Source of the DNA: Vitrella brassicaformis CCMP3155
Taxonomy: Eukaryota > Protista > Chromerida
Length of the DNA stretch: 28,603 bases
Direction of reading: 5' to 3'
Assembly (NCBI GenBank): GCA_001179505.1
Contig: CDMY01000705.1
Span: 1 to 28,603 of the forward strand
Positions within the stretch are counted from its first letter, which is position 1. Each line of letters starts with the position of its first letter. Shown one piece after another: positions 292 through 23,715 of this stretch. The position numbers and the translations under genes were made by a program. The notes under the pieces are model-generated. The model was not told the origin of the DNA, did no database searches, and worked only from the letters and a program-made list of their open reading frames with translations.

Positions 292-1752
292 TAACATGGC
301 CTCCTTGATGTGTTGGGGCAGGAAAGTGGGAATGTCAGGGATCTGACAGAGGGGAGAAAGAGAGAGAGGGATAGTTATCTCGGGTGTCAGGAAAAGGACA
401 GTCACCTTTCCCTGCACGACAACCGCAGTGATGATCTGCACGTGGACCTTGCCCTCGAAGGGAGGCCGGCCTGAACACCACAGCACTAGAATACGCTGCG
501 CAGATTGTGCGGACCTGCTGACCTCCAAACAGCTCAGCCAGTACTGAAGCACAGAAGCGCACAGTATTGAATAGCGAGAGGTTATGCATCAGTGTCTGGC
601 GACAGGTCTGCTTACTTCCTCCCAGGGCCCAGATGTCATCCTTCTCAGAGAGCTTCTCCACTGAAACACAGACAGACAGACAGACAGACAGAGAGACAGT
701 GAAGATCGCCGACAAATTCGATTCTCACACTTACACTCATCCTTCAGAGACTCGGGGGACATATAGTTGGGCGTGCCCCCTCCTGCAGCGCACTCATGAT
801 TGTGGTCAATTCAGCCTCTCAGCGGTTCTGTGCCTGTCTTCGTGTACCTCCGGCGACTGTAGTTGTCCTCTGGATGCTGCGCGTCATACCGAAGTCAGAT
901 ATCTTGATGGTCAAATCCTGACCCAACTGAACACGGAAGGGAGAGACGAAGCAGCAAGAAGACGCCCATAGAGAGCGGCAAAGAACACTGTGTCCTCACC
1001 AGAAGGTTTCCAGGCTTCAGGTCCCTGTGCATGATGCCATGATTGTGAAGATACTGCAGGCCCTCACATATCTGACAAAGACAGACACAGACGACAGGCG
1101 GCGGCCGGCGGCGGTCGGCGTCTCCCGTTCGTCCGCTCTGCTGCACCTCTCTGATGGACTTGTCGCGGACGTTCGGCTTCAGCGGTCGATTCTTGGCCAG
1201 GTATTTCTCCAGTGACCCGCCCTCACACAACTTTGATCCACAAAGACAGGCACCTAAGATGCCCATTGATGAAGTCCGAAAGAGGCCGACCTGTGACGAT
1301 CACGAGGCCGTATTTCCTGTGTGTGCAGACGCCCAGAAACTCAACTATGTTGGAGTGGCGCAGGTGCTGCATCTCCTGAGCCTCGGCCAGAATATCTTCC
1401 ATCGCCCCAGCCATCAGGTCCTAGACGCCACACCAATGCAGACAGCACACAATGCAGCCACGGGGGTTCAGCCGCTCACCTCATCGTCGACGTCTTCCCC
1501 TCTGTCCCTAAGGCGGTCGACATTCATGATCTTGACCGCCACGGGCCGCCTCTTCCACAGCCCCTTGTAGACCACCCCGAAGCCCCCGCTCCCTACATGA
1601 TCATGAGTCATGACAACACAGCACACAACAAGACGTCGGGAGGGGGGGTGCAATCGGGCCATCTGGCGGCTGTTGCGCCGACCGAGGGGCTTGTCATTCT
1701 CATTGAATTTCAGGTCCCTCGCCCTGATCAACAAACGGGGGTTGGCGGCCAT
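292..1752 (-). CDS. TKL-type Ser/Thr protein kinase (K1), multi-exon, 3' end unresolved, possibly pseudogenised
   Basis: Exons 1752-1683, 1592-1480, 1420-1291, 1232-1147, 1071-1000, 926-848, 782-735, 660-616, 543-523, 470-406, 342-~292. They encode GSGGFGVVYKG, VAVK, HRDLKPGN, DFG, YMSPE, DIWALG and PPFEG. The acceptor before the 1232 exon reads AA rather than AG. Exon sizes (86, 72, 79, 65 nt) match the paralog at 20588-21987. Confidence 0.85.
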
Positions 1753-2298
1753 CCAAAACACCCAATTGTGAAGGCCGCGTTGGGTGCCGATGGCCCCTGT
1801 TCAATCAAGCCAGGGGCTCAGCCACTCGAGAAAAGGGCCAGGAGAGGCCGATTGGGGGGCGGGACGCCGGGACGAGACCCAAGCAACAGGGGAATCGTCG
1901 GATTTTGCAAGCTTTCAAGCGATCCTCCGGTTCAGGCCTTCTCTCGCCGTGACGAGAAGGGTCTGAGGGCGAGGGATCCCCAGTAGGCCCGCCACCAAAG
2001 ATGTTTCGCAGGAGATGAATGAAAATGACCCGTTGCCTGTCTGCCTTTCCGCTCGCGTCAGACTCTGCCTGTGTCACCTGCAGGAGTAAGTGCCGAGTGG
2101 AATGTAGGAATGTAGTGGAATGCCTGAGGGCCCTGAGACGGCCAACTACGTGAATGGCAGCCGGTCACTATACTTTCGAGTGCAGAATGGTAGTCTGATC
2201 TGCGTGCGTGTGGTGAGCCCGCCTGTATGAGTGTGTGCTCTGTCCTAGTGGCCAGTGCCCATCTTTCGCGAATACGGGCGTGGGTGCATACCCTTAAG

Positions 2299-2657
2299 GG
2301 CAAGCGTCTTGGTGGTCGAAAACTGGCTGCGAGCCACGAAAACCGACCTCTGAGCCCAAAACCAGCTTTGCACAGTGCAAAACCGGTTTTGCGACAGAGA
2401 AAACCGGTTTGCAATAGAGAAAACCGGTTTTGCTTGTTTTCAAAGCCCGGTTTTCCCTGTTTGAGTGCCGGTTTTCGAGCCACACTTTTGTGGAGACATC
2501 TATTTCCGGTTTTGCTTGTTTTCAAAGCCCGGTTTTCTCTATCGCAAACCGGTTTTCTCTGTCGCAAAACCGGTTTTGCACTGTGCAAAGCTGGTTTTGG
2601 GCTCAAAGGTCGGTTTTCGTGGCTCGCAGCCAGTTTTCGACCACCAAGACGCTTGCC
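2299..2657. mobile_element. Non-autonomous foldback/MITE-like element with 129-bp terminal inverted repeats
   Basis: 2299-2427 is the reverse complement of 2529-2657 with 2 mismatches. Termini are GGCAAGC...GCTTGCC. The arms are built from ~19-21 bp AAAAC-initiated subrepeats. A 32-bp direct repeat lies at 2424-2455 and 2506-2537. No clean target-site duplication is visible. Confidence 0.75.
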
Positions 2658-3359: not shown

Positions 3360-4108
3360 TGACACACACCGACAGCCAGCGTCATGGTGTGTGGATGCGT
3401 GTGTGGTGTGAGTGGTGGTCCCTTCCTCCAGTCGTCATTGCATGTAAACCGACGAGAAAAGGACAGTCGACTGATTGATTGGTGCATGAGCAAGACAGAC
3501 GTACAAAACGGGTGTTTTGTTTCGTTTCGTCTTCTCTCTCTCTGTGTTGTGTGTGTGTCTGTCTGAGTGTGAGTGTGAGTTTTAATGCGTGAATGACTGA
3601 ATGGGTGGCTGGATGGATGAGTGCGTTCGTCCGTGGCTTTTCTCTGTCTGTCTCTTTTTGTTGGAAGTCCATGCGTTGAGCACCATGCGTACCTTTAACT
3701 AAGTGTGTGCCCACAGTTGTTGATTCGACACATCCACTCGATAGAGACAGACAGGCAGACAGACAGACAGACGGACGACCACCAGCAGGACACCACACCC
3801 GACCAAAGGAGAGAGTGCACCAGACGCCCCCCTCACTCACTCAACACGCAGAGAGGCAGCCGCTGCCAGGGGGTGAGATCCGTGCCGAAGAAGACGAGGC
3901 ATTGTTTGTGTCAAAGGGTCCCTGCGCCTCTGTCCGCCCCGTCGGAGCTCAATTGACCGGTGAGCACATCAAAGAGCACTCAGCAAGTGGACCATCCAGT
4001 CGCACACAGACTTACCAAAGAGTACTCCCACACACAAACACAAGAGACACGAGGGCTTACACACTCCACACACGAAGAAATAAGACCACAGCCATCACCA
4101 CACAGTGA

Positions 4109-4180
4109 CTATCGCTTGTACTCCTTCATGATCTTTCTGATCTCCGGCTGTTTCTCCGCCAAGTCCCAGGCGTCCGCCCC
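4109..4180 (-). pseudogene. Orphan duplicate of the ankyrin-gene terminal exon
   Basis: Reads AWDLAEKQPEIRKIMKEYKR*, homologous to the terminal exons at 4268-4354 and 23647-23715. 23 bp at 4116-4138 are identical to 4281-4303. It lacks an AG acceptor and has a 1-nt deletion relative to GKTPW. Confidence 0.75.
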
Positions 4181-4267
4181 ATGGGGACATGGGGTCAAGG
4201 GGAGGAGGGGAAATTTTCTTGCCGGTATATTGGTCAGTAGTGCATGCGCACCAAGCCTAGACTAGTC

Positions 4268-5852
4268 CTATTTCTTGTTTTTGTACTCCTTCATGATCTT
4301 TCTAATGTTCGGCTTTTCCTTCGCCAATTCCCACGGGGTCTTCTCGCCCGACCACTGTTGTCATGGGATGAGATGAGCACATGACTTGACCCATCGATGG
4401 TGTGGATGTCTGTGTGCACTCACCTTGGTGGTTTTGATGTTGAGCAGAGCACCGCCGCCCCACTCGAGCCTTTGAGAATGACACACAGACAGAGAGAGTG
4501 GAGGAGACACTCGCGTCAGTCAGTCATCTGTGTGGCCCACAGCTGAGACACAGCTGCAGATTGGTTAGAGTATGCAGCCCAATGGAGTGCCGTCCAGCCC
4601 CTCTGTGTGTGTGTCATACAAACAGGCAAGGGCAATCAGACAGATGAGAGGCATTCTGTTTCTGTTTCGCCCGCATGAGGTCTCACATTGTCCTTCTCAG
4701 TGAGAAGCTCTTTCCCTCCTTTGGCATACAGAGCCTTCAGCGCACCGACATGACCACTGGAGGCAGCCAATATGAATGGCGTAGTGCCGCTCTGAATCCA
4801 CACACACACACACACACAGTTGGCACACACAGTTGGCACACAGTTGGCAATCAGACAGATGAGAGGCATTTTGTGTTTTTTCGCGGGTGAGGTCTCACAT
4901 TGTCCGTCTGTGTGAGAAGCTTCTCTCCTCCTTTGGCAAACAGGGCCTCCATCACCTTGACATGACCGTAGTAGGCAGCCAGCATGAATGACGTCTTGCC
5001 CCCCTGAATCAACAAACACACGCACAGTTGGCACACTGAGGTGTCAGAGACGTGTGTGTGCTCTGTCACCTTGTCGCGTGCATCGATCAGTTTGGGATCC
5101 CACTCCAGCAGCTGATCGACAGCCGCAAGACGGCCATTGCTGGCAGCGTGGTGCAGAGCATTGTCACGATTCTGCATTGCATCGCAGCCAACATACATCT
5201 TCCCTCACCACCACCAGCAGAACAAATCATTCTCGTCTGTGTCGGTACCTCGTCTGTTTGTTGCAGTACGTCAGGTTTTTTCTCATGGATGACCGACATG
5301 ACGTCCACGTGACCCTTCTCAGCAGCCACGAGGAAGGGCGTGTTCTGCGCGCATTAATGAGAAGACACAGCCAGACCACTGAGTCCACTTCTGTCATCTT
5401 CACGATTGCATACCTTGTACTGGCTCTCGTCTCGTTTGTCGAGTATGCTCTTGCCGTCTTTGTACCTGTCGCTGGCGATGAGCGCACGAACGGCCTCCAC
5501 ATCGCCGACCTCTGCAGCTTTGAAGATGTCATTCTGCAGACAACCAGCTCAAGAAGAGCGGCCCATTGACGTGTGGGACTCAGCTGCTGGTGTGTCCCTG
5601 ACGTGTTTGATCTGCGGCTGTGGGGCGCTCGGCGGTGTCTTTGCTAACGGCTGCTGGGTGGGGGACGCTGCACGACAAACAGATCATGTGCTAATGTGTC
5701 TCTCGCTGTGTGTGTGTGTGTCAGTGATCACCTTTAACGCTCTCGCCCGCCCCGCGGAAGAATCCCCAGCGGAACCGCGGCGGTGCCTGCAAGTCAGCTG
5801 CTGTCCCTCTTTGACTCCCAGACGAAGGAGAGATGCCCAACTTGTCGAGGAC
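4268..5852 (-). CDS. Ankyrin-repeat protein (ANK1), about 6 repeats; additional uncertain 5' exon(s) in 5956-6078
   Basis: In-frame exons 5852-5732, 5667-5603, 5533-5414, 5344-5249, 5171-5070, 5003-4899, 4791-4687, 4602-4541, 4469-4424, 4354-4268 (TAG). Ankyrin motifs: TPFLVAAEKGH, NALHHAASNGR, TSFMLAAYYGH, TPFILAASSGH, TALHWAAYSN. Confidence 0.88.
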
Positions 5853-5893
5853 CTGCCATGGGATGAGCAGCAAGGCGCAACCAAGAGATGAGC
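4310..5893 (-). repeat. Inverted paralogous segment of ~22128-23715 (exons and introns)
   Basis: 5721-5893 is the near-identical reverse complement of 22128-22300. Downstream introns and exons align through the last ankyrin exon. Homology stops inside an intron at ~5893/22128. Confidence 0.9.
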
Positions 5894-7204
5894 CTCCATC
5901 CCTTTGCTGTTCCTGCTCGTGTGTGTCTGCCGTGTGTGTGTAGCTTTCCCTCCACCTCGGAAGTAACTTGGAGTGTTTTGTCAGATTGTTCTTGGAATGT
6001 AACTTGGAACGTCTTGGCAGCGGGGAGAGTGAGGCAGAAACACACCACTCGGAGGGCCTTGAGAAGCGCCGTCGCCATCTGCAATGACACCGAAGCGCAC
6101 ACGCACATTGCATCCCGCATCACTTGCATGGCGCAGTACAGGGCGGCTATTGAAGTGCTCAGTGACACCGTCTCGAGAGCCCCAGTCACCTCAACTAGTG
6201 AGCCTCAGGGAGGATGTTCACGCGACGCAGGGCGGCAAGGATATAAGGCTCCTTTAAGACTTGAGGTGAGGACGGTCCGGCTGGACAAAAGGGATGCTTT
6301 GGATGATGTGCTGTGCTAAACTCAGAGACGGGCGGAGACGCCTCTTCTCTGATTTGCGCGCTTTTCCCTGGCCGCCCTCCTCCCTCATTCATTCATTCAT
6401 TCATTCGGCGTCCTCATGAACACACAGGGCATTCATTCGGACGAGACTAGCAGCACTGCAAGACACCTCGCAGCGACCAGGGCGGCTGGTCCGGCTCACC
6501 AAGGTTTCCCTTGGCTACTCCTGGCTTTCACATGCCCCGTATATTTTACAAGCGAGGGGGGAAAAAGTCGCCGGCGCCCTACTTGATACCCGCCGGGCTG
6601 CGAGCGGTGTGGCGTGTCAGGTTGGTGTCTATGGGGGTGCGTGCACGCGTCTCTCTGTGCTCTGTGTCCGTGTCGTGTCTGTGTCGTGTCATGTCGTGTC
6701 CCCGGTGGAGCCGCCCATACATACATACATAAATGTGTACACACGCATATAATACACATCGCACGCAGAGACGAACGTGTGTGAGTCGAATGAATGACGG
6801 TGTGTCTGCAATCCATCTACACGTGGTCATTGAAGGTGGTGTCGTGTCGTGGCGTGCAGTGACGTGTGGATGTCTGAAGAGACACGCAGGATTAGTTCAC
6901 GTGAAGCGTCTGTCTTTTTCCTCTCGTTGTGTACAGAATGTTCATGCTGTGTGCGCCTGTGTGTGCATGTGTCGGCTGGCTGCGTGCGGACCTATCTTGA
7001 ACTATCATAGACACACGTGCTCTCAATCTCACCAAGGAAGGTGTCATGTGCATGCCGCACCCATACTACTCATTAAGGAAAACCAGTAAGGCATTCGAAA
7101 TGTTTCAGCAGACAAAAGGCAGGTAGATGGGCTGGCAAGAACTAATTGCTCAAGGGGCGGGGCCTTGTCTGTCTGTCTGTCTGATCGACTGACTGATGTG
7201 TGTC

Positions 7205-7412
7205 TTACATACTGGTGTCCTCGATGACCTCCCGCATGACGGCGTCGATCTCGTCGATCGCCCCTTGCAGGAGCCTCTTGCAAGTCAGCCGGTACTCAAT
7301 AGCCACACGCATGTTGATGCCCAGCGACTTGTCCTCGCGCAGCCGCCTCTCGTCCTCCGCTATGCTCGTCCGCTTCCTCAAGGACAGCAGATGTCTGATG
7401 ACCCCCTGCACA

Positions 7413-7452
<40 letters not shown>

Positions 7453-9659
7453 ATGAGGCGACACTAGTCTGGTGTGTCTACACATGCGCCGATCGGTGTG
7501 TGGCGGTTCGTACCTTAACGCTTTTGAGTGCATCCAACTCGACCTGCTTGTCGGCCAACCGCCCCCTCCGGAGGTCACACAAGGCATCCAACTCGGCCCG
7601 ACAGAGACCCACCATCCGCTGAGGTCCCCTTCGTTGTGCTTCCTGTCTGGCTTCTCAGCTCGTCGATGGTCCTGGCAGAGAGAATGCGCATTGCGGCCAC
7701 GAAGCGGCCGTCCACAATGGGCGGCACTGTGCGTTCAGAGGACAACGGGGAAGAGGCCACAATGGACAGATGAATGGGTTACCGCCGCCGGATACCCACC
7801 TGCCTTTATCTTCATCAGGCGATCGCTGTCAGTCCCCAGCAGCCGTAACCTCTCCAACAGGTCAGCCTAGATAGTGAGATAGATACCGCACACATTCCAT
7901 CGAGAAACAATGACGGCAGCGCGCGTCGCGTACTCGCCATTCGCTGATCTCGAGCGCACCGTCCTCGCCTCCTGAGGCGGTGGGCGCGAAGGTGTCCCGG
8001 CCGGCCTGGATCAGGCGCTTGTCGAAGGAGAACGGCAGAAAGTCATGGGGGCCGCCCTCGGGCACAAACCCGTACCACGTCAGATAAAAGGACGATGGCA
8101 ACCTGATTGCATTCACACCAACAACAAAGGCCAACACACGGCACAGTGGGAGGGTGGATGGCAGGCATTCACGTCCCTCCTCTCTCTCTCTCTCTCTCTC
8201 TCTCGGTGTGTATGTGTGTGTGTGTGTGTGTGTGTCTTACTCTTGGCTCCTCGCAAAGCGACCGTAGTCGTAACGGAGGAATTCACCCGCCGAGATATCC
8301 CTTTTGACATACATAAAATGATACAGTATGGACGAAAGGCTTGAGGGGAGGATTGACAGATCGAAATGCATACCGGTTGGCAACCACGAGAACGGACCCC
8401 TCCGCATCCCATTCCAGCCGGCAGTTGGCGTCGAAGAAGAATTCGTGATTGATCATGTCAACCAGGGGCACCAAGCGAGCAGGGAACACCAATGCATCGA
8501 TGAATTGTTTACTGTCTGGAAATGACCTGACGCACAGACAGACATGAGGGTCGGTCTATCTCTCTGTCTGGCTGGCTGGCTGGCTGGCTGGGGGGAAGGG
8601 GGGGTCACTTACCTGGGAAGCCAGATAGACCGTGTGTAGGAAATAGCCAAGGCCCACCCCAAGAGGTTCGCGTCCACCTCCACCTCCCCACCACCACCAA
8701 CACCACCACCGTTGGCACCGGCGGCATCACTCTCGAAGAACATACGCTTTGTGGTCACATACCGGTGAGAGATCTTCTTGGCCAGCTGCATCAGGGACTT
8801 GGACACCGATCCGACATGCGCCCGTTGGCCGGTCTCCTCGAGCGCGGCGAGGCAGGCCGAGTTGAAGAACAGTGGGAGCCCGACAAAGGATGCCGGCAGG
8901 ACGTCGATGTAGGGTTGGAAGAAGGAGTTGCCCTTGATGCGCTCGGCGAGCACCACCAGCCCAAGCTGCAGCATGAACAGGTCGGGGGGCACTGAGCCGT
9001 CAACGGTTTCCGGCAGTTGAATGCCTGCATGTATTATTGCACACATCCATCCATCCATCCACCCACCCACCAGTCAATCAATCGAGACGAGAAAGACCGT
9101 GGGCACGCCGACTCTCTCTCTGTGTCTGTCTGTCTGTCTATCTGTCCATTGTACCTTTGAGCAACCATTCCATATCGTGTCGATAGGTGGCATTGACGTC
9201 CATGTGCAGCCTCCTCGGCACATAGAGCACCACCTCCCCCTCCCTCTTGTCCTTCAGACACTTCACCCCAAACCCCATACCCCTCTCCCTCTCACAGACC
9301 ACGTCGCTCGCCACACCGCCGTGCCGAGTGATCCAGCTCTGCAGTGCGTCGAAGCTCTTCTTCAGGGCTGGCACAGACACACTGGCCGTGGCCGGCGTGG
9401 CCATCATTGGTGGCGCCGGCTGATGATTCTTCCGCCTTCGTCTATTGTGCTGATGGAGGGGTGTGTGCTGATGGATGAATGACGCCGGCCGGATGGACGG
9501 CGCAAGAGGGCTGGCGGCGGCAGAAAGGCACGGCATCGCCAGGACGGTGCATAGCAGCGAGATGGGAGGGTGGGGCAGTGCTGACCTCCTCCTCTTTCGC
9601 TTTCCTGAGCCCCGGTGTTGCAGATCTTGATGCACACGGATGCGGATCGTTGATACCAT
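7205..9659 (-). CDS. SET-domain protein-lysine methyltransferase, Rubisco-LSMT/SETD3-like, probably plastid-targeted
   Basis: Exons ~9659-9155, 9024-8613, 8526-8374, 8300-8241, 8102-7934, 7866-7800, 7726-7514 (internal splice path ambiguous), 7405-7205. Motifs: WITRHGG...GFGV, SFFQPYIDVLP, LVPLVDMINH, RDISAGEFLRYDYG, LTWYGFV, and the C-terminal substrate-binding EDERRL...AIEYRL. The N-terminus is a hydrophobic stretch followed by ASF and a basic S/P-rich segment. The start codon is uncertain. Confidence 0.85.
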
Positions 9660-9853
9660 TAGATCTGCCTGGCAGGCTGAGTCTGTTCGCACCGCGTGCG
9701 CGAGCTAAGCTCCCACCAAAGCTCGCACAGGGCGCAAGGGGAAAAGGGAGCAATGAAGACGGCATACGACGCACGGTGCCGCGTCTGACGTTGTTGTTGC
9801 GAGATCTCTTCATTATCTGCAGCTGAAGCAAACGTGTATCGGCTGACCCGGGA
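9660..9853. promoter_or_regulatory. Putative bidirectional promoter between the SET and PES-like genes
   Basis: Divergent predicted start codons lie ~200 bp apart. No specific motif was identified, and the interval depends on the uncertain SET start. Confidence 0.45.
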
Positions 9854-20587: not shown

Positions 20588-23500
20588 ATGGCTGCCAGTA
20601 AGGTGCCTCGTCTGGTGATCTACGCCAAGGATCTCACCTTCAGCGAGGATGACAAGCTCGGTGAGTGTCACTGAGACGATGTGTGGTGGCAGGGGGCTGT
20701 CACGGGCATCCTTGTTGTGTCTGGGGCACACAGGAAGGGGGGGATTTGGAGTTGTGTACCGGGGCGTCTTCAGGGGGCGGCCCGTGGCCGTCAAGATCGC
20801 CCACCCGAGCGAAGAGCTCGACATGCACGTACGTGCGAACACACAGCCTGAGGGGGAGGAGGATTCCCTCACTGGTGGGGTGACCTCCGTGTGTGTGTGT
20901 GTGCCTTCTGTGTCTGTGCAGGAACAGTTCATTGAGGTTTTGCGAGAGGTGGAGCCCATGCAGCATCTGCGTCATCCCAACATCGTAGAGTTCCTGGGCG
21001 TCTGTGCGGCGGACAAAAAGCACGGACTCATGATCGTCACCGGTGAGGGCTGCCGCTCCTTCGCTGCGTTCATCTGACTTCCTCTGTGTGTCTGCTCGCC
21101 ATTCTCATCAGAGTTGTGTGAGGGCGGCTCTCTGGCGGCCTATCTGGCCACGAACAGACCACTGAAGCCCGAAGTGCGAGACAGACTCATAAGAGAGGTA
21201 CGGATACGGAAGAGCAGACAGACAGCCGGCGTCAGGCGTCTCATCTCTGTGTGTGTGTGTCGATTGCCGTCAGATATGTGAAGGAGTGCAGTATCTTCAC
21301 GACCACGGGATCGCTCACCTGGACCTTAATCCGGCGAACATTCTGGTGAGGGAAGCCATCTCTCAGTCGACGGCTGCAGGCGGCTGTCATGTCACACCTG
21401 TTTGTCAGTTGACTGAGGGGCTTGTGGCGAAGATATCTGACTTCGGCATGACGCGCAACACTCAGAGGACAACGAGCTCCTTTGCAGGTGGCCAGAGACA
21501 CCCTGACAGAGACCAAAGTGAATGCACTCAATCGCACTGATGCCCGGTGCTGCAGGCGGGGGGACCTACAACTTCATGTCTCCCGAAGGATTGGATCCTG
21601 AGAAGCGTAAGTGCGTGAGAAGTTTCGTGTGGACGGCGGCCTTTGTATGACTGCTTGTGTGTGCAGTGGGGAAGCCTTCGATTCAGTCGGATAGTGGGGA
21701 AGCCTTCGATTCAGTGGCGAGCTACACGGAGGTCAGCACAGTCGTCTGCCCACGAGTCAGACGCAATATTATTGAGGCATCAGCTGAGATTTGCGGCGCT
21801 CAGGCGGGCCGCCCTTCGAAGGCCAAAGCCCCGCCGCCATCATCACAGCAGTTGTGGTCCGGAAGCAGGTGACACTCCACTTCTCTTGTTGTCCGCTCCC
21901 TGTCCTGCTTTCATTCGGTGTCTCCCTTCATGTCAGATTCCGGCCATCCCGGCATCCCTGCCGGCGAACGTCAAGAATGCCATCAAGGCAAGAAAGACAT
22001 CATGCGTATCGATTACATACTCTCTTCTCTGTCCCCTCTCTGCGTTTATCAGAGTTCTTTTGCCTACAAAGCGGCTAACCGCCCGACAGCCAAACAAGTC
22101 ACACACACACACACTCGGGCAGAGATTGCTCATCTCTTTGCTGCGCCTTGCTGCTCATCCCATGGCAGGTCCTCGACAAGTTGGGCATCTCTCCTTCGTC
22201 TGGGAGTCAAAGCGGGACAGCAGCTGACTCGCAGGCACCGCCGCGGTTCCGCTGGGGATTCTTCCGCGGGGCGGGCGAGAGAGTTAAAGGTGATCACTGA
22301 CTGACATGAGGCTGCTCTCTGCTCTGTTTGCACATCTTGCGGTCAAATGCAGGCAGTGCGTCATCTCCTGGTGTGTCTGCTGTCGGCCATTCGTCGGGTG
22401 TCCACATGAGCACGGCCAGCACCACAACGGGGACGACGAGCAGTGTGGTCAAAAAGACCTCTCAGCCGCTGTCACAGCACATAGGTCCGCGACACACACA
22501 CACACACACAGCGAGAGACACAGCGCCACATGATCTGTCTGTGTCGTGCAGCGTCCCCCGCCCAGCAGCCATCAGCAAAGACGCCGCCGAGCGCCCCACA
22601 GCCGCAGATCAAACACGTCAGGAAGACAGAGACTGAATCCCACACGTCAATGGGCCGCTGCTCTTGTGCTGATTGTGTGTCAGAGTGACATCTGGAAGGC
22701 TGTCGACGCCGGCGATCTTCCGGCGGTTCGTTCGCTCATCGCTCGAGACGGCAAGAACATACTCGACAAACGAGACGAGAGCAATTCCGACAAGGTATGC
22801 GATCGTGAAGACGACAGAAATGCACTCAGCAGTCTTTGATGCGTTCTCATTTATGCGCGTAGAAAACACCCTTCCTGTTGACTGCAAAAAGGGGTCACGT
22901 GGGCATCATGAAAGTCATGTATGAGAGCAAACCTGACGTACTGCAGCAAACAGACGAGGTACCGACACAGACAAACCATCCTCTGTGTTGCTGCTGAAGA
23001 GATGTGTGTCGGCTGTGATGCAATGCAGACTGGCTCGAATGCTCTGCACTTGGCTGCCTTCGATGGCCGTCTTGCGGCGGTCAAGCAGCTGCTGGAGTGG
23101 GATCCCAAACTGGTCGATGCACGGACCAAGGTAACAGAGCACAGACACGTCTCTGACACGTCAGTGTGTGTGTGTGTGTATGTGTGTTGATTGCAGAGTG
23201 GGTGGTGGGGGCCAGGCGCCACGCCATTCATCTATGCTGCCGTCAATGGTCATGTCGAGGTGCTGAAGGTTCTGTATGCCAAAGGAGGGGAGGACCTGCT
23301 CACTCAGACGGACAAGGTGAGACCTCACCCACGAAAAAACACAAAATGCCTCTCATCTGATTGATTGCCTTTCTTTTGTTCGCATGACACACACAGTTCG
23401 GCAGGACGGCACTCCACAAGGCTGTATCCTATAGCCGCTCTGCAGTTGTGTCTCTGCTGTGGGCCACACAGATGACTGACTGACGCGAGTGTCTTCTCCA

Positions 23501-23715
23501 CTCTCTGTCTCTCTGTGTGTCATTCTCAAAGGCTCGAGTGGGGCGGCAGTGCTCTGCTCGACATCAAAGACAAAATTGTGAGTGCACACAGACATTCACA
23601 CCATCGATGGGTCGAGTGATGTGCTCATCACATCTCGTGACGACAGGGGAAGACGCCCTGGGACGAGGCGGCGAGCAAGCCGGAGATCAGAGAGATCATG
23701 GTGAAGTACAAGTGA
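20588..23715 (+). pseudogene. TKL-type kinase-linker-ankyrin repeat gene (K2-ANK2), disrupted in kinase subdomain IX
   Basis: Kinase exons 20588-20660, 20734-20828, 20922-21042, 21112-21197, 21274-21345, 21409-21487, 21556-21606, 21667-21731 (lesion, frameshift), 21804-21868, 21937-21987 (GC donor), 22053-22097. Linker exons 22169-22289, 22353-22484, 22552-22616. Ankyrin exons 22684-22794, 22863-22958, 23029-23130, 23197-23316, 23397-23458, 23532-23577, 23647-23715. All junctions after the lesion are phase-compatible. Confidence 0.8.
21665..21715 (+). repeat. 23-bp direct duplication at the kinase lesion
   Basis: AGTGGGGAAGCCTTCGATTCAGT at 21665-21687 and 21693-21715, separated by CGGAT. Confidence 0.95.

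What the first reader, a model, noticed from the sequence alone, without database searches (positions are those of the whole stretch)
4541..5533. Ankyrin variation is concentrated on the predicted ligand-binding surface, like a diversifying receptor repertoire
Paired exons of ANK1 and ANK2 are nearly identical at framework codons but differ by whole codons at particular sites. Examples: DE-NRD-NALH-H-AA-SN-GRLAAV vs DE-TGS-NALH-L-AA-FD-GRLAAV, and R-G-W-TALH-W-AA-YS-NQ-SA vs F-G-R-TALH-K-AV-SY-SR-SA. These are the beta-turn and helix-1 positions that form the ankyrin binding groove, the ones randomised in DARPin libraries. Coupled to a kinase, this suggests a rapidly diversifying intracellular sensor family, possibly immune-like or effector-recognising, in a protist. 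I am not aware of such a system being described for this lineage.
Basis: partly seen in the sequence, partly recalled or inferred. Interest (0 to 1): 0.8.

Follow-up and report, generated by a model that had tools for sequence, protein, structure and literature searches.

The report
Fast-changing binding face of ankyrin genes
Two ankyrin-repeat genes of the alga Vitrella brassicaformis belong to a family of about 25 copies that stay nearly identical, introns included, except at the few residues that normally grip a partner protein; those residues change two to four times faster than silent sites, as in immune-type receptors, but what they bind is unknown.

Summary
ANK1 (4268-5667, minus strand) and ANK2 (22552-23715, plus strand) encode one ankyrin repeat per phase-0 exon.

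**The pair**
- Over 188 aligned codons, dS is 0.245.
- Framework dN is 0.16.
- dN at the six DARPin-randomised positions per repeat is 0.68, so omega is about 2.8 (Fisher p=6e-4 against silent sites, 2e-7 against introns).

**The family**
- I recovered 15 cassettes from 8 Vitrella brassicaformis loci; with other proteins listed, about 25 exist.
- Surface omega is 2.3 (CI 1.6-3.2) by counting and 4.1 by maximum likelihood (likelihood-ratio p about 2e-6). Framework omega is 0.5-0.66.
- Introns inside the cassette diverge less (pi 0.144) than exons (0.236).
- The attached kinase domains are saturated at silent sites, so the ankyrin cassette evolves in concert.

- ANK1 is an expressed, kinase-less gene, matched by a spliced transcript.
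- ANK2 sits behind a degenerate kinase.
- An immune-like role is untested.

The closest known case is fungal NLR ankyrin repeats. Earlier notes of this scan describe the same family on other contigs.

The parts
6187..6342 (-). ANK1 5' untranslated exon
   Evidence: Transcript contig L001 bases 1-156 align at 99.4%
5954..6080 (-). ANK1 first coding exon (MATALLKALRVVCFCLTLPAAKTF...). It is new to this copy, replaces the kinase, and has a hydrophobic leader
   Evidence: L001 is 100% identical here. Protein P0001 maps with CDS 5956-6078. Kyte-Doolittle maximum 2.28 at VVCFCLTLPAA
5732..5854 (-). ANK1 linker exon (VLDKLGISPSS...). In the family this exon follows the end of the kinase
   Evidence: The family proteins read RPTAKQ|VLDKLGIS
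5720..5893 (-). Recent gene-conversion tract shared with 22128-22301: 5 differences in 174 bases, against about 20% in the flanks. It covers the intron end plus the linker exon
   Evidence: The 100 bases upstream are unrelated (28% ungapped identity)
5603..5667 (-). ANK1 linker exon 2 (SPTQQPLAKTPPSAPQPQIKH)
5414..5533 (-). ANK1 repeat 1 (N-terminal cap), phase-0 exon
5249..5344 (-). ANK1 repeat 2 exon
5070..5171 (-). ANK1 repeat 3 exon. Its hypervariable codons are NRD, H and SN
4899..5003 (-). ANK1 repeat 4 exon
4687..4791 (-). ANK1 repeat 5 exon. It is a tandem copy of repeat 4 plus its intron, absent from ANK2 and from the other sampled cassettes
   Evidence: Direct repeat D7, 4665-4814 against 4877-5026, 77%
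4541..4602 (-). ANK1 repeat 6, first half (exon ends in phase 2)
4424..4469 (-). ANK1 repeat 6, second half
4268..4354 (-). ANK1 C-terminal cap exon with stop codon TAG
3706..4267 (-). ANK1 3' untranslated region. It holds a relic copy of the last exon at 4116-4168, which has no acceptor site
   Evidence: L001 bases 1097-1739 align at 94.7%. Direct repeat D8
20588..22097 (+). Kinase K2 (10 exons), upstream part of the ANK2 gene. It is degenerate: HLDLNPAN in the catalytic loop, a direct 20-base repeat at 21668 and 21696 (period 28), and no subdomain IX
   Evidence: P0153 mapped. Sequence, alignment, Pfam kinase hits, repeat
22169..22616 (+). ANK2 linker exons: 22169-22289, 22353-22484 (absent from ANK1) and 22552-22616
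22684..23715 (+). ANK2 ankyrin cassette. Exons are 22684-22794, 22863-22958, 23029-23130, 23197-23316, 23397-23458, 23532-23577 and 23647-23715 (stop TGA). All are open, with AG/GT borders
   Evidence: The public model P0153 stops in the intron after repeat 2
296..1800 (-). Kinase K1. It is a separate gene downstream of ANK1, has canonical HRDLKPGN, and is cut by the contig end
   Evidence: It is 90% identical over 1.5 kb, introns included, to the P0156 gene on another contig

Best explanation
ANK1 and ANK2 are two members of a multigene family, so far found only in Vitrella brassicaformis. In this family an old, diverged TKL-type kinase is joined through a linker to a six- or seven-repeat ankyrin cassette, built with one repeat per phase-0 exon.

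The cassette evolves in concert. Gene conversion, or repeated copying of the cassette between paralogs, keeps framework codons, silent sites and even introns 75-95% alike. Selection for new binding specificities drives rapid replacement at the beta-turn and first-helix residues (positions 3, 5, 10, 13, 14 and partly 2 and 33). These residues form the concave binding face.

The ankyrin domain is most likely a variable protein-recognition module that brings a partner to the kinase. ANK1 arose when a cassette was copied from within the intron before the linker exon, lost the kinase and gained a new first exon. It is expressed, and probably acts as a kinase-less binder: an adaptor, a competitor, or a differently targeted form.

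**Shown:** gene structures, expression of ANK1, family size, omega above 1 at the surface positions, introns less diverged than exons, saturated kinase domains, mosaic relationships between copies.

**Inferred:** gene conversion as the homogenising process, protein binding as the function, and any role in sensing other organisms.
For: **Gene models.**
- Exons have AG/GT borders.
- ANK1 matches a spliced transcript contig at 100% identity.
- Pfam ankyrin and kinase hits.
- AlphaFold model with pLDDT 93 and pTM 0.89, matching ankyrin domains and DARPins.

**ANK1-ANK2 pair.** dS 0.245; surface dN 0.68 (omega 2.8); framework omega 0.67; intron divergence 0.164.

**All 28 pairs among 8 paralogs.** dS 0.19-0.46; surface omega 1.5-4.6; framework omega 0.43-1.06.

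**13-16 unique exons per full repeat type (11 for exon 6a), from 8 loci.**
- Surface piN 0.49 against piS 0.28, giving omega 2.3 (bootstrap CI 1.6-3.2).
- Framework omega 0.49 (CI 0.39-0.61).
- Peaks at positions 3, 5, 10, 13 and 14 in every repeat.

**Maximum likelihood, GY94+F3X4.**
- Omega 4.06 for surface codons (39) and 0.66 for framework codons (148).
- Fixing omega at 1 costs 11 log-likelihood units, p about 2e-6.

**Concerted evolution.**
- Kinase domains of the same genes have pS 0.59-0.78, which is saturated.
- Cassette introns are 63-95% identical among all paralogs, against about 55% for shuffled sequence. The one exception is the linker-to-repeat-1 intron of P0046, a 247-base intron that does not align.
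- Intron pi is 0.144, below exon pi of 0.236.
- The nearest relative of ANK1 changes along the cassette, and 46% of pairs of informative intron sites fail the four-gamete test.
- A 174-base tract is 97% identical between the two copies.

**Closest exon pairs.** Among exon pairs with under 8% framework divergence, surface codons differ at 415 of 951 bases and the framework at 151 of 2775.
Against: - No ligand, no expression data under challenge and no population data exist, so the function is inferred from the pattern alone.
- Recombination violates the single-tree assumption of the maximum-likelihood test and can inflate omega.
- Silent change is also somewhat raised at surface codons (piS 0.37 against 0.27). 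Omega measured within those codons alone is therefore only about 1.5.
- The test for clustering of incompatible sites was marginal (p=0.07).
- The kinase of ANK2 looks dead, and its public model is truncated, so ANK2 may be decaying.
- High dN/dS under gene conversion can also arise if old differences are merely protected from homogenisation.
Confidence: 0.78

Rival explanations
1. Old specificities are protected rather than newly evolving. The paralogs diverged long ago, as their kinases did. Each has fixed binding residues under purifying selection. Gene conversion has since erased silent and intron divergence around those residues, so dN/dS above 1 reflects a lowered denominator, not ongoing adaptive change.
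For: - The kinase domains are saturated, while cassette dS is only about 0.3.
- Relationships are mosaic, and there is a 97% identical tract.
- Some exon pairs are identical at surface codons too, which fits wholesale copying (L010+5720 against L010+12182, 0 of 18).
Against: - Surface codons are interleaved with framework codons every 1-4 codons.
- Exon pairs with 0 of 42 framework differences still show 5-8 of 18 surface differences.
- Keeping single codons while converting their immediate neighbours, silent sites included, would need tracts of only a few bases.
- Even under this model selection must keep the copies different, so it is still a diversity-maintaining system.
Confidence: 0.15
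2. Relaxed constraint or decay. ANK1 lost its kinase and ANK2 has a dead one. The two are drifting, and surface residues are simply the least constrained part of any ankyrin repeat.
For: - Overall omega of the pair is about 1 (dN 0.252, dS 0.245).
- The K2 kinase is degenerate.
- One neighbouring cassette, L002b, is visibly broken.
Against: - Relaxation cannot push the rate above neutral, yet surface dN is 2.8 times dS and about 3.7 times the corrected intron divergence.
- All 15 ankyrin exons of the two genes are open, with intact splice sites.
- ANK1 is transcribed and correctly spliced.
- Framework omega is 0.5-0.67, so purifying selection persists.
- Departures from the family consensus are symmetric: 11 in ANK1 and 8 in ANK2.
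- The same pattern holds among paralogs with intact kinases.
Confidence: 0.04
3. A local mutational process, such as targeted hypermutation or micro-conversion from a pool of donor repeats, raises change at those codons without selection on binding.
For: - Silent diversity is somewhat higher at surface codons (0.37 against 0.27).
- Motif combinations such as AAICGN or AARHGN recur in different paralogs with different beta-turns.
Against: - The hot positions repeat with the structural period (3, 5, 10, 13, 14) in repeats of different sequence, not with any DNA motif.
- Replacement still exceeds silent change within those codons.
- No mechanism with codon-level precision is known in eukaryotes.
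Confidence: 0.03

Closest known systems
Fungal NOD-like receptors with highly conserved ANK, TPR or WD repeats (Podospora anserina and others; Dyrka et al. 2014, PMC4986451)
   Same: In both, ankyrin repeats are kept nearly identical by concerted evolution. [quoted passage not shown]
   Different: In fungi the exchange is mostly among repeats within a gene and its alleles, and the repeats follow a NACHT or NB-ARC domain. Here the exchange is among whole cassettes of paralogs. Each repeat type keeps its identity, introns are co-homogenised, and the partner domain is a TKL kinase or nothing. No NOD domain appears among the precomputed Pfam hits.
RIPK4 / ANKK1 (animal kinases with C-terminal ankyrin repeats)
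   Same: The domain order is the same: a TKL-group kinase, then a linker, then ankyrin repeats, as in ANK2 (P0153) and most family members.
   Different: No orthology was shown. The animal genes are single-copy and conserved, not a diversifying family. ANK1 has no kinase.
DARPin libraries (designed ankyrin repeat proteins)
   Same: The naturally hypervariable positions coincide with the positions randomised by design: 3, 5, 13 and 14, and less clearly 2 and 33. The predicted fold matches DARPin structures.
   Different: Position 10 is also hypervariable here. Positions 2 and 33 are only moderately variable. Several beta-turns carry length changes, for example SGWWGPGATPF in ANK2.
MHC and plant NLR-LRR gene families
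   Same: In both, introns and framework are homogenised by conversion while the binding residues diversify.
   Different: The fold and lineage are different, and no immune function has been shown here.

Membership tests
Ankyrin repeat domain (Pfam Ank_2 PF12796, Ank PF00023) | Sequence match to the repeat profile above the curated threshold | tested here: met
   window:4854-5204:- scores Ank_3 35.6 bits (cut-off 22.3), Ank_2 33.9 (27.3) and Ank 30.5 (21.1)
Ankyrin repeat domain (Pfam Ank_2 PF12796, Ank PF00023) | Stacked helix-turn-helix repeats joined by beta-hairpin loops | tested here: met
   AlphaFold2 model of P0001:100-343 has pLDDT 93 and pTM 0.89, with paired helices every 33-35 residues. 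The best Foldseek matches are ankyrin domains and DARPins, E about 1e-10
Diversifying receptor-like repertoire | Many paralogs | tested here: met
   15 cassettes, two of them fragments, in 8 loci, plus further Vitrella proteins not fetched
Diversifying receptor-like repertoire | dN/dS above 1 confined to the predicted binding surface | tested here: met
   Omega 2.3 (CI 1.6-3.2) at the surface against 0.49 in the framework. Maximum-likelihood omega 4.06 against 0.66, likelihood-ratio p about 2e-6
Diversifying receptor-like repertoire | A demonstrated ligand, or a response to biotic challenge | not testable with these tools
No paper on this family was found
Kinase-ankyrin architecture (as in RIPK4 / ANKK1) | Protein kinase domain N-terminal to the ankyrin repeats in one polypeptide | tested here: not met
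   This applies to ANK1, the gene of the finding. The transcript and protein P0001 have no kinase, and the upstream neighbour is a SET-domain gene. The feature is met for ANK2 (P0153)
Active eukaryotic protein kinase (for K2, attached to ANK2) | HRD..K catalytic loop and an intact subdomain IX (alpha-F helix) | tested here: not met
   K2 reads HLDLNPAN. The DIWALGG segment is missing. A 20-base direct repeat (period 28) and frame breaks lie in its place. VAVK and DFG are kept
NOD-like receptor (STAND NTPase with repeats) | A central NACHT or NB-ARC domain | tested here: not met
   No such Pfam family appears among the precomputed hits of any Vitrella family member

The most novel reading that the evidence does not exclude
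Chromerid algae, the free-living relatives of apicomplexan parasites, have their own innate-immune-like recognition repertoire. It consists of kinase-ankyrin sensors, some lipid-anchored, together with kinase-less expressed derivatives such as ANK1 that may act as decoys or adaptors. Gene conversion among intron-bearing cassettes serves as the generator of diversity, and the binding face is selected to track changing foreign or self proteins.
Probability: 0.25. Interest if true: 0.85.

Novelty: new variant of a known kind. Interest (0 to 1): 0.65.

Why it matters
Repeat-domain receptors that diversify at their binding face are the hallmark of innate recognition systems in plants, animals and fungi. 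None is described for alveolates. Here the signature is unusually clean: introns are more conserved than the exons they separate, and omega is above 1 at exactly the residues that protein engineers randomise. This points to a lineage-specific recognition family in a close relative of apicomplexans. It offers a natural set of ankyrin binders with paired signalling domains, and a testable case of concerted evolution combined with diversifying selection between paralogs.

Tried and rejected
1. **ANK1 and ANK2 as a private recent inverted duplication: rejected.** ANK1 is 75-80% identical to every cassette, and its nearest relative changes along its length. Only the 174-base linker tract is recently shared.

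2. **ANK1 fused to the downstream kinase K1: rejected.** The transcript ends in a 3' untranslated region at 3706.

3. **ANK2 as a decaying copy that explains omega of about 1: not supported.** Polarisation against the family consensus is symmetric, 11 against 8.

4. **First register of repeat 1 was off by one.** This was. I corrected it, and the numbers changed little.

5. **Search for a spliced ANK2 transcript: uninformative.** A copy-specific 26-mer found nothing in JGI metagenome contigs. A control 25-mer from the known ANK1 transcript also found nothing.

6. **PHI-like clustering test on intron sites: marginal** (p=0.07).

8. **Joined spliced models.** I did not hand joined models of my own to any search tool. 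The database's own protein P0001, which equals the ANK1 model, was used instead. The joined ANK2 cassette was analysed only in local scripts.

9. **Model coordinates.** These are not available, so surface mapping rests on the repeat register and secondary structure.

Full report
**What is there.**
The window is a complete 28,603-base contig of Vitrella brassicaformis CCMP3155. The source names come, and the organism was first suggested by earlier scan notes. The finding covers the ankyrin part of a minus-strand gene that I call ANK1.

Its coding exons are:
- 5956-6078, a new first exon
- 5732-5852 and 5603-5667, the linker
- seven ankyrin repeats: 5414-5533, 5249-5344, 5070-5171, 4899-5003, 4687-4791, 4541-4602 plus 4424-4469, and 4268-4354 with the stop codon

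All have AG/GT borders, and nearly every repeat is one phase-0 exon. ANK2 lies on the plus strand at 22552-23715 and has the same layout minus one repeat. Pfam confirms the ankyrin repeats and the neighbouring kinases. An AlphaFold2 model of the ANK1 repeat region is confident (pLDDT 93, pTM 0.89), and its best structural matches are ankyrin domains and DARPins.

**ANK1 is expressed and has no kinase.**
A full HMMER search with a stop-free stretch of the window returned a 343-residue protein, P0001, that equals my spliced model. It is encoded without introns on a 1,745-base JGI transcript contig. Every coding exon aligns to the window at 99-100% identity. That contig adds a 5' untranslated exon (6187-6342) and a 3' untranslated region reaching 3706.

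The gene upstream of ANK1 is a SET-domain gene. The kinase K1 downstream (296-1800, minus strand) is a separate gene. It is 90% identical, introns included, to the P0156 gene on another contig and is cut by the contig end.

ANK1 therefore arose from a cassette copied from inside the intron before the linker exon. Similarity to ANK2 starts at 5893, within that intron, and the first coding exon is unrelated to anything in the family.

**ANK2 follows a kinase, but a damaged one.**
The public protein P0153 joins kinase K2 (20588-22097) to the linker and to the first two ankyrin repeats, then runs into an intron. The later ankyrin exons are nevertheless open and have good splice sites.

K2 reads HLDLNPAN where relatives read HRDLKPxN. 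It lacks the DIWALGG segment (subdomain IX). In its place are a 20-base direct repeat at 21668 and 21696 and frame breaks. I could not test whether ANK2 is expressed.

I numbered each repeat from the conserved T/N-P/A-L-H motif. As the surface class, I used the six positions randomised in DARPin libraries (2, 3, 5, 13, 14, 33); this set comes from my own knowledge of that design. Results over 188 aligned codons:

| Class | Codons | Amino-acid differences | dN | omega |
|---|---|---|---|---|
| All | 188 | not computed | 0.252 | about 1 (dS 0.245) |
| DARPin positions | 29 | 22 | 0.68 | 2.8 |
| Positions 4 and 10 | 10 | 7 | 0.76 | 3.1 |
| Framework | 149 | 38 | 0.163 | 0.67 |

The aligned introns differ at 16.4% of sites. 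Surface replacement change exceeds silent change (Fisher p=6e-4) and intron change (p=2.5e-7). Codons with two or three changed bases make up 15 of the 39 surface codons (DARPin positions plus 4 and 10) and 16 of the 149 framework codons.

**The pattern is family-wide.**
Word and profile searches list more than 20 Vitrella proteins with the same cassette, several of them from transcript assemblies. I fetched eight genomic loci and recovered 15 cassettes, two of them fragments. I took exon borders either from exact spliced mapping of the public proteins or from the shared AG/GT pattern.

- Among 8 paralogs, all 28 pairs give dS 0.19-0.46, surface omega 1.5-4.6 and framework omega 0.43-1.06.
- There are 13-16 unique exons per full repeat type and 11 for exon 6a. 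With these, mean pairwise replacement diversity at surface positions is 0.49 and silent diversity is 0.28.
- That gives omega 2.3 (column bootstrap CI 1.6-3.2). Framework omega is 0.49 (CI 0.39-0.61).
- Per-column profiles peak at positions 3, 5, 10, 13 and 14 in every repeat. Positions 2 and 33 are only moderately variable.
- A GY94+F3X4 fit on nine intact cassettes gives omega 4.06 for 39 surface codons and 0.66 for 148 framework codons.
- Fixing omega at 1 costs about 11 log-likelihood units, p about 2e-6.
- Aromatic residues are twice as frequent at surface positions as elsewhere.

**The cassette evolves in concert.**
- The kinase domains of the same genes are saturated at silent sites (pS 0.59-0.78, amino-acid identity 35-59%).
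- Whole cassettes, introns included, align at 75-80% nucleotide identity between all paralogs.
- Individual introns are 63-95% identical, against about 55% for shuffled controls. The one exception is the linker-to-repeat-1 intron of P0046, which does not align.
- In ungapped columns, intron diversity (0.144) is lower than exon diversity (0.236).
- The nearest relative of ANK1 changes from block to block: P0080, P0046, P0046, P0080, P0016, ANK2, P0046.
- 46% of pairs of informative intron sites show all four gametes.
- A 174-base tract (5720-5893 against 22128-22301) is 97% identical between ANK1 and ANK2, although their flanks differ by about 20%.
- Among the 50 exon pairs with under 8% framework divergence, the framework differs at 151 of 2,775 bases and surface codons at 415 of 951. 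Several pairs have no framework difference at all but 5-8 changes in 18 surface bases.

**Interpretation.**
The best reading is a lineage-specific kinase-ankyrin family whose recognition module is kept uniform by gene conversion, or by repeated copying of the cassette. Its concave binding face is under diversifying selection.

- Relaxed constraint alone is excluded, because surface change exceeds both neutral yardsticks. The framework is still under purifying selection, and ANK1 and ANK2 depart from the family consensus to similar extents.
- The main surviving rival is that old specificity residues are protected from conversion, so that the denominator is lowered. The fine interleaving of hot and cold codons argues against it, but only population or sister-species data can settle it.
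- Recombination can inflate tree-based omega, which is why I give most weight to the counting results on classes fixed beforehand.

That the family senses foreign molecules is inference by analogy. The closest documented analogue is the ankyrin repeat domain of fungal NOD-like receptors. [quoted passage not shown]

Full-text searches found no paper on a Vitrella or chromerid kinase-ankyrin family. Earlier notes of this scan (s1-239435, s1-233268, s1-239491, s1-239572) describe the same family on other contigs and on the ANK2 side of this one. My tests here were made independently and agree with them.

**Limits.**
- My own joined spliced models were not sent to any search tool.
- Coordinates of the predicted structure are not available, so the mapping to the concave face rests on the repeat register, the DSSP secondary structure and the literature.
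- The sampled cassettes are those reachable with 10 of the 12 allowed look-ups; they are not the whole family.

Noticed in passing
window 296-1800 (-) and L009:9971-11500: Kinase K1 is 90% identical over 1.5 kb, introns included, to the kinase part of the P0156 gene on another contig. This is a recent segmental duplicate. The contig ends 295 bases after the match, so K1's own linker and ankyrin part may lie beyond the assembly.
   Followed up: partly
window 21600-21810 (+): The K2 kinase carries a 20-base direct repeat (21668 and 21696, period 28) and frame breaks where subdomain IX should be. It also has HLD..N in place of HRD..K. The public model P0153 skips this region.
   Followed up: partly
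window 2299-2427 / 2529-2657: An inverted repeat with 129-base arms, 98% complementary and 101 bases apart, lies between the ANK1 3' untranslated region and K1. It looks like a hairpin or a MITE. ORF-like stretches on both strands mirror each other.
   Followed up: no
window 4116-4168 (-): A relic second copy of the last ankyrin exon (...WDLAEKQPEIRKIMKEYKR*) sits inside the ANK1 3' untranslated region, without an acceptor site. In another paralog (L004:7629-7703, compared with transcript P0151), alternative last exons give tails with or without a CaaX-like end.
   Followed up: partly
window 5956-6078 (-); P0016 N-terminus (L005:6001-6085): Two kinase-less family members have independently acquired hydrophobic N-terminal leaders. 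ANK1 has VVCFCLTLPAA (Kyte-Doolittle 2.3) and P0016 has TFLLVALCILV (3.1). These may be signal peptides, which would send an ankyrin binder into the secretory or plastid route.
   Followed up: partly
window 7000-9700 (-); L003:18857-21585; L010:17744-20472; L004:21449-22545: A SET / Rubisco-LSMT-like methyltransferase gene lies next to family members at several loci. This suggests that the segmental duplications carried neighbouring genes along.
   Followed up: no
window 23197-23316 (+): Repeat 4 of ANK2 has a five-residue insertion in the beta-turn (SGWWGPGATPF, against SGTTPF in repeat 5 of ANK1). The binding face therefore also changes in length.
   Followed up: no
L010:6228-6772 and 7334-7878: Identical ankyrin exons flank a run of N in the public assembly. 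This is probably an assembly duplication around a gap. Identical exons were counted once.
   Followed up: partly
L002:4241-5213: A second cassette lies 0.8 kb downstream of the P0070 gene and is partly broken: repeat 1 is truncated and repeat 3 has deletions. Its exon 6a is identical to that of P0070 except at five surface codons, which differ at 9 bases by eye in the alignment and at 8 of 18 in the count.
   Followed up: partly
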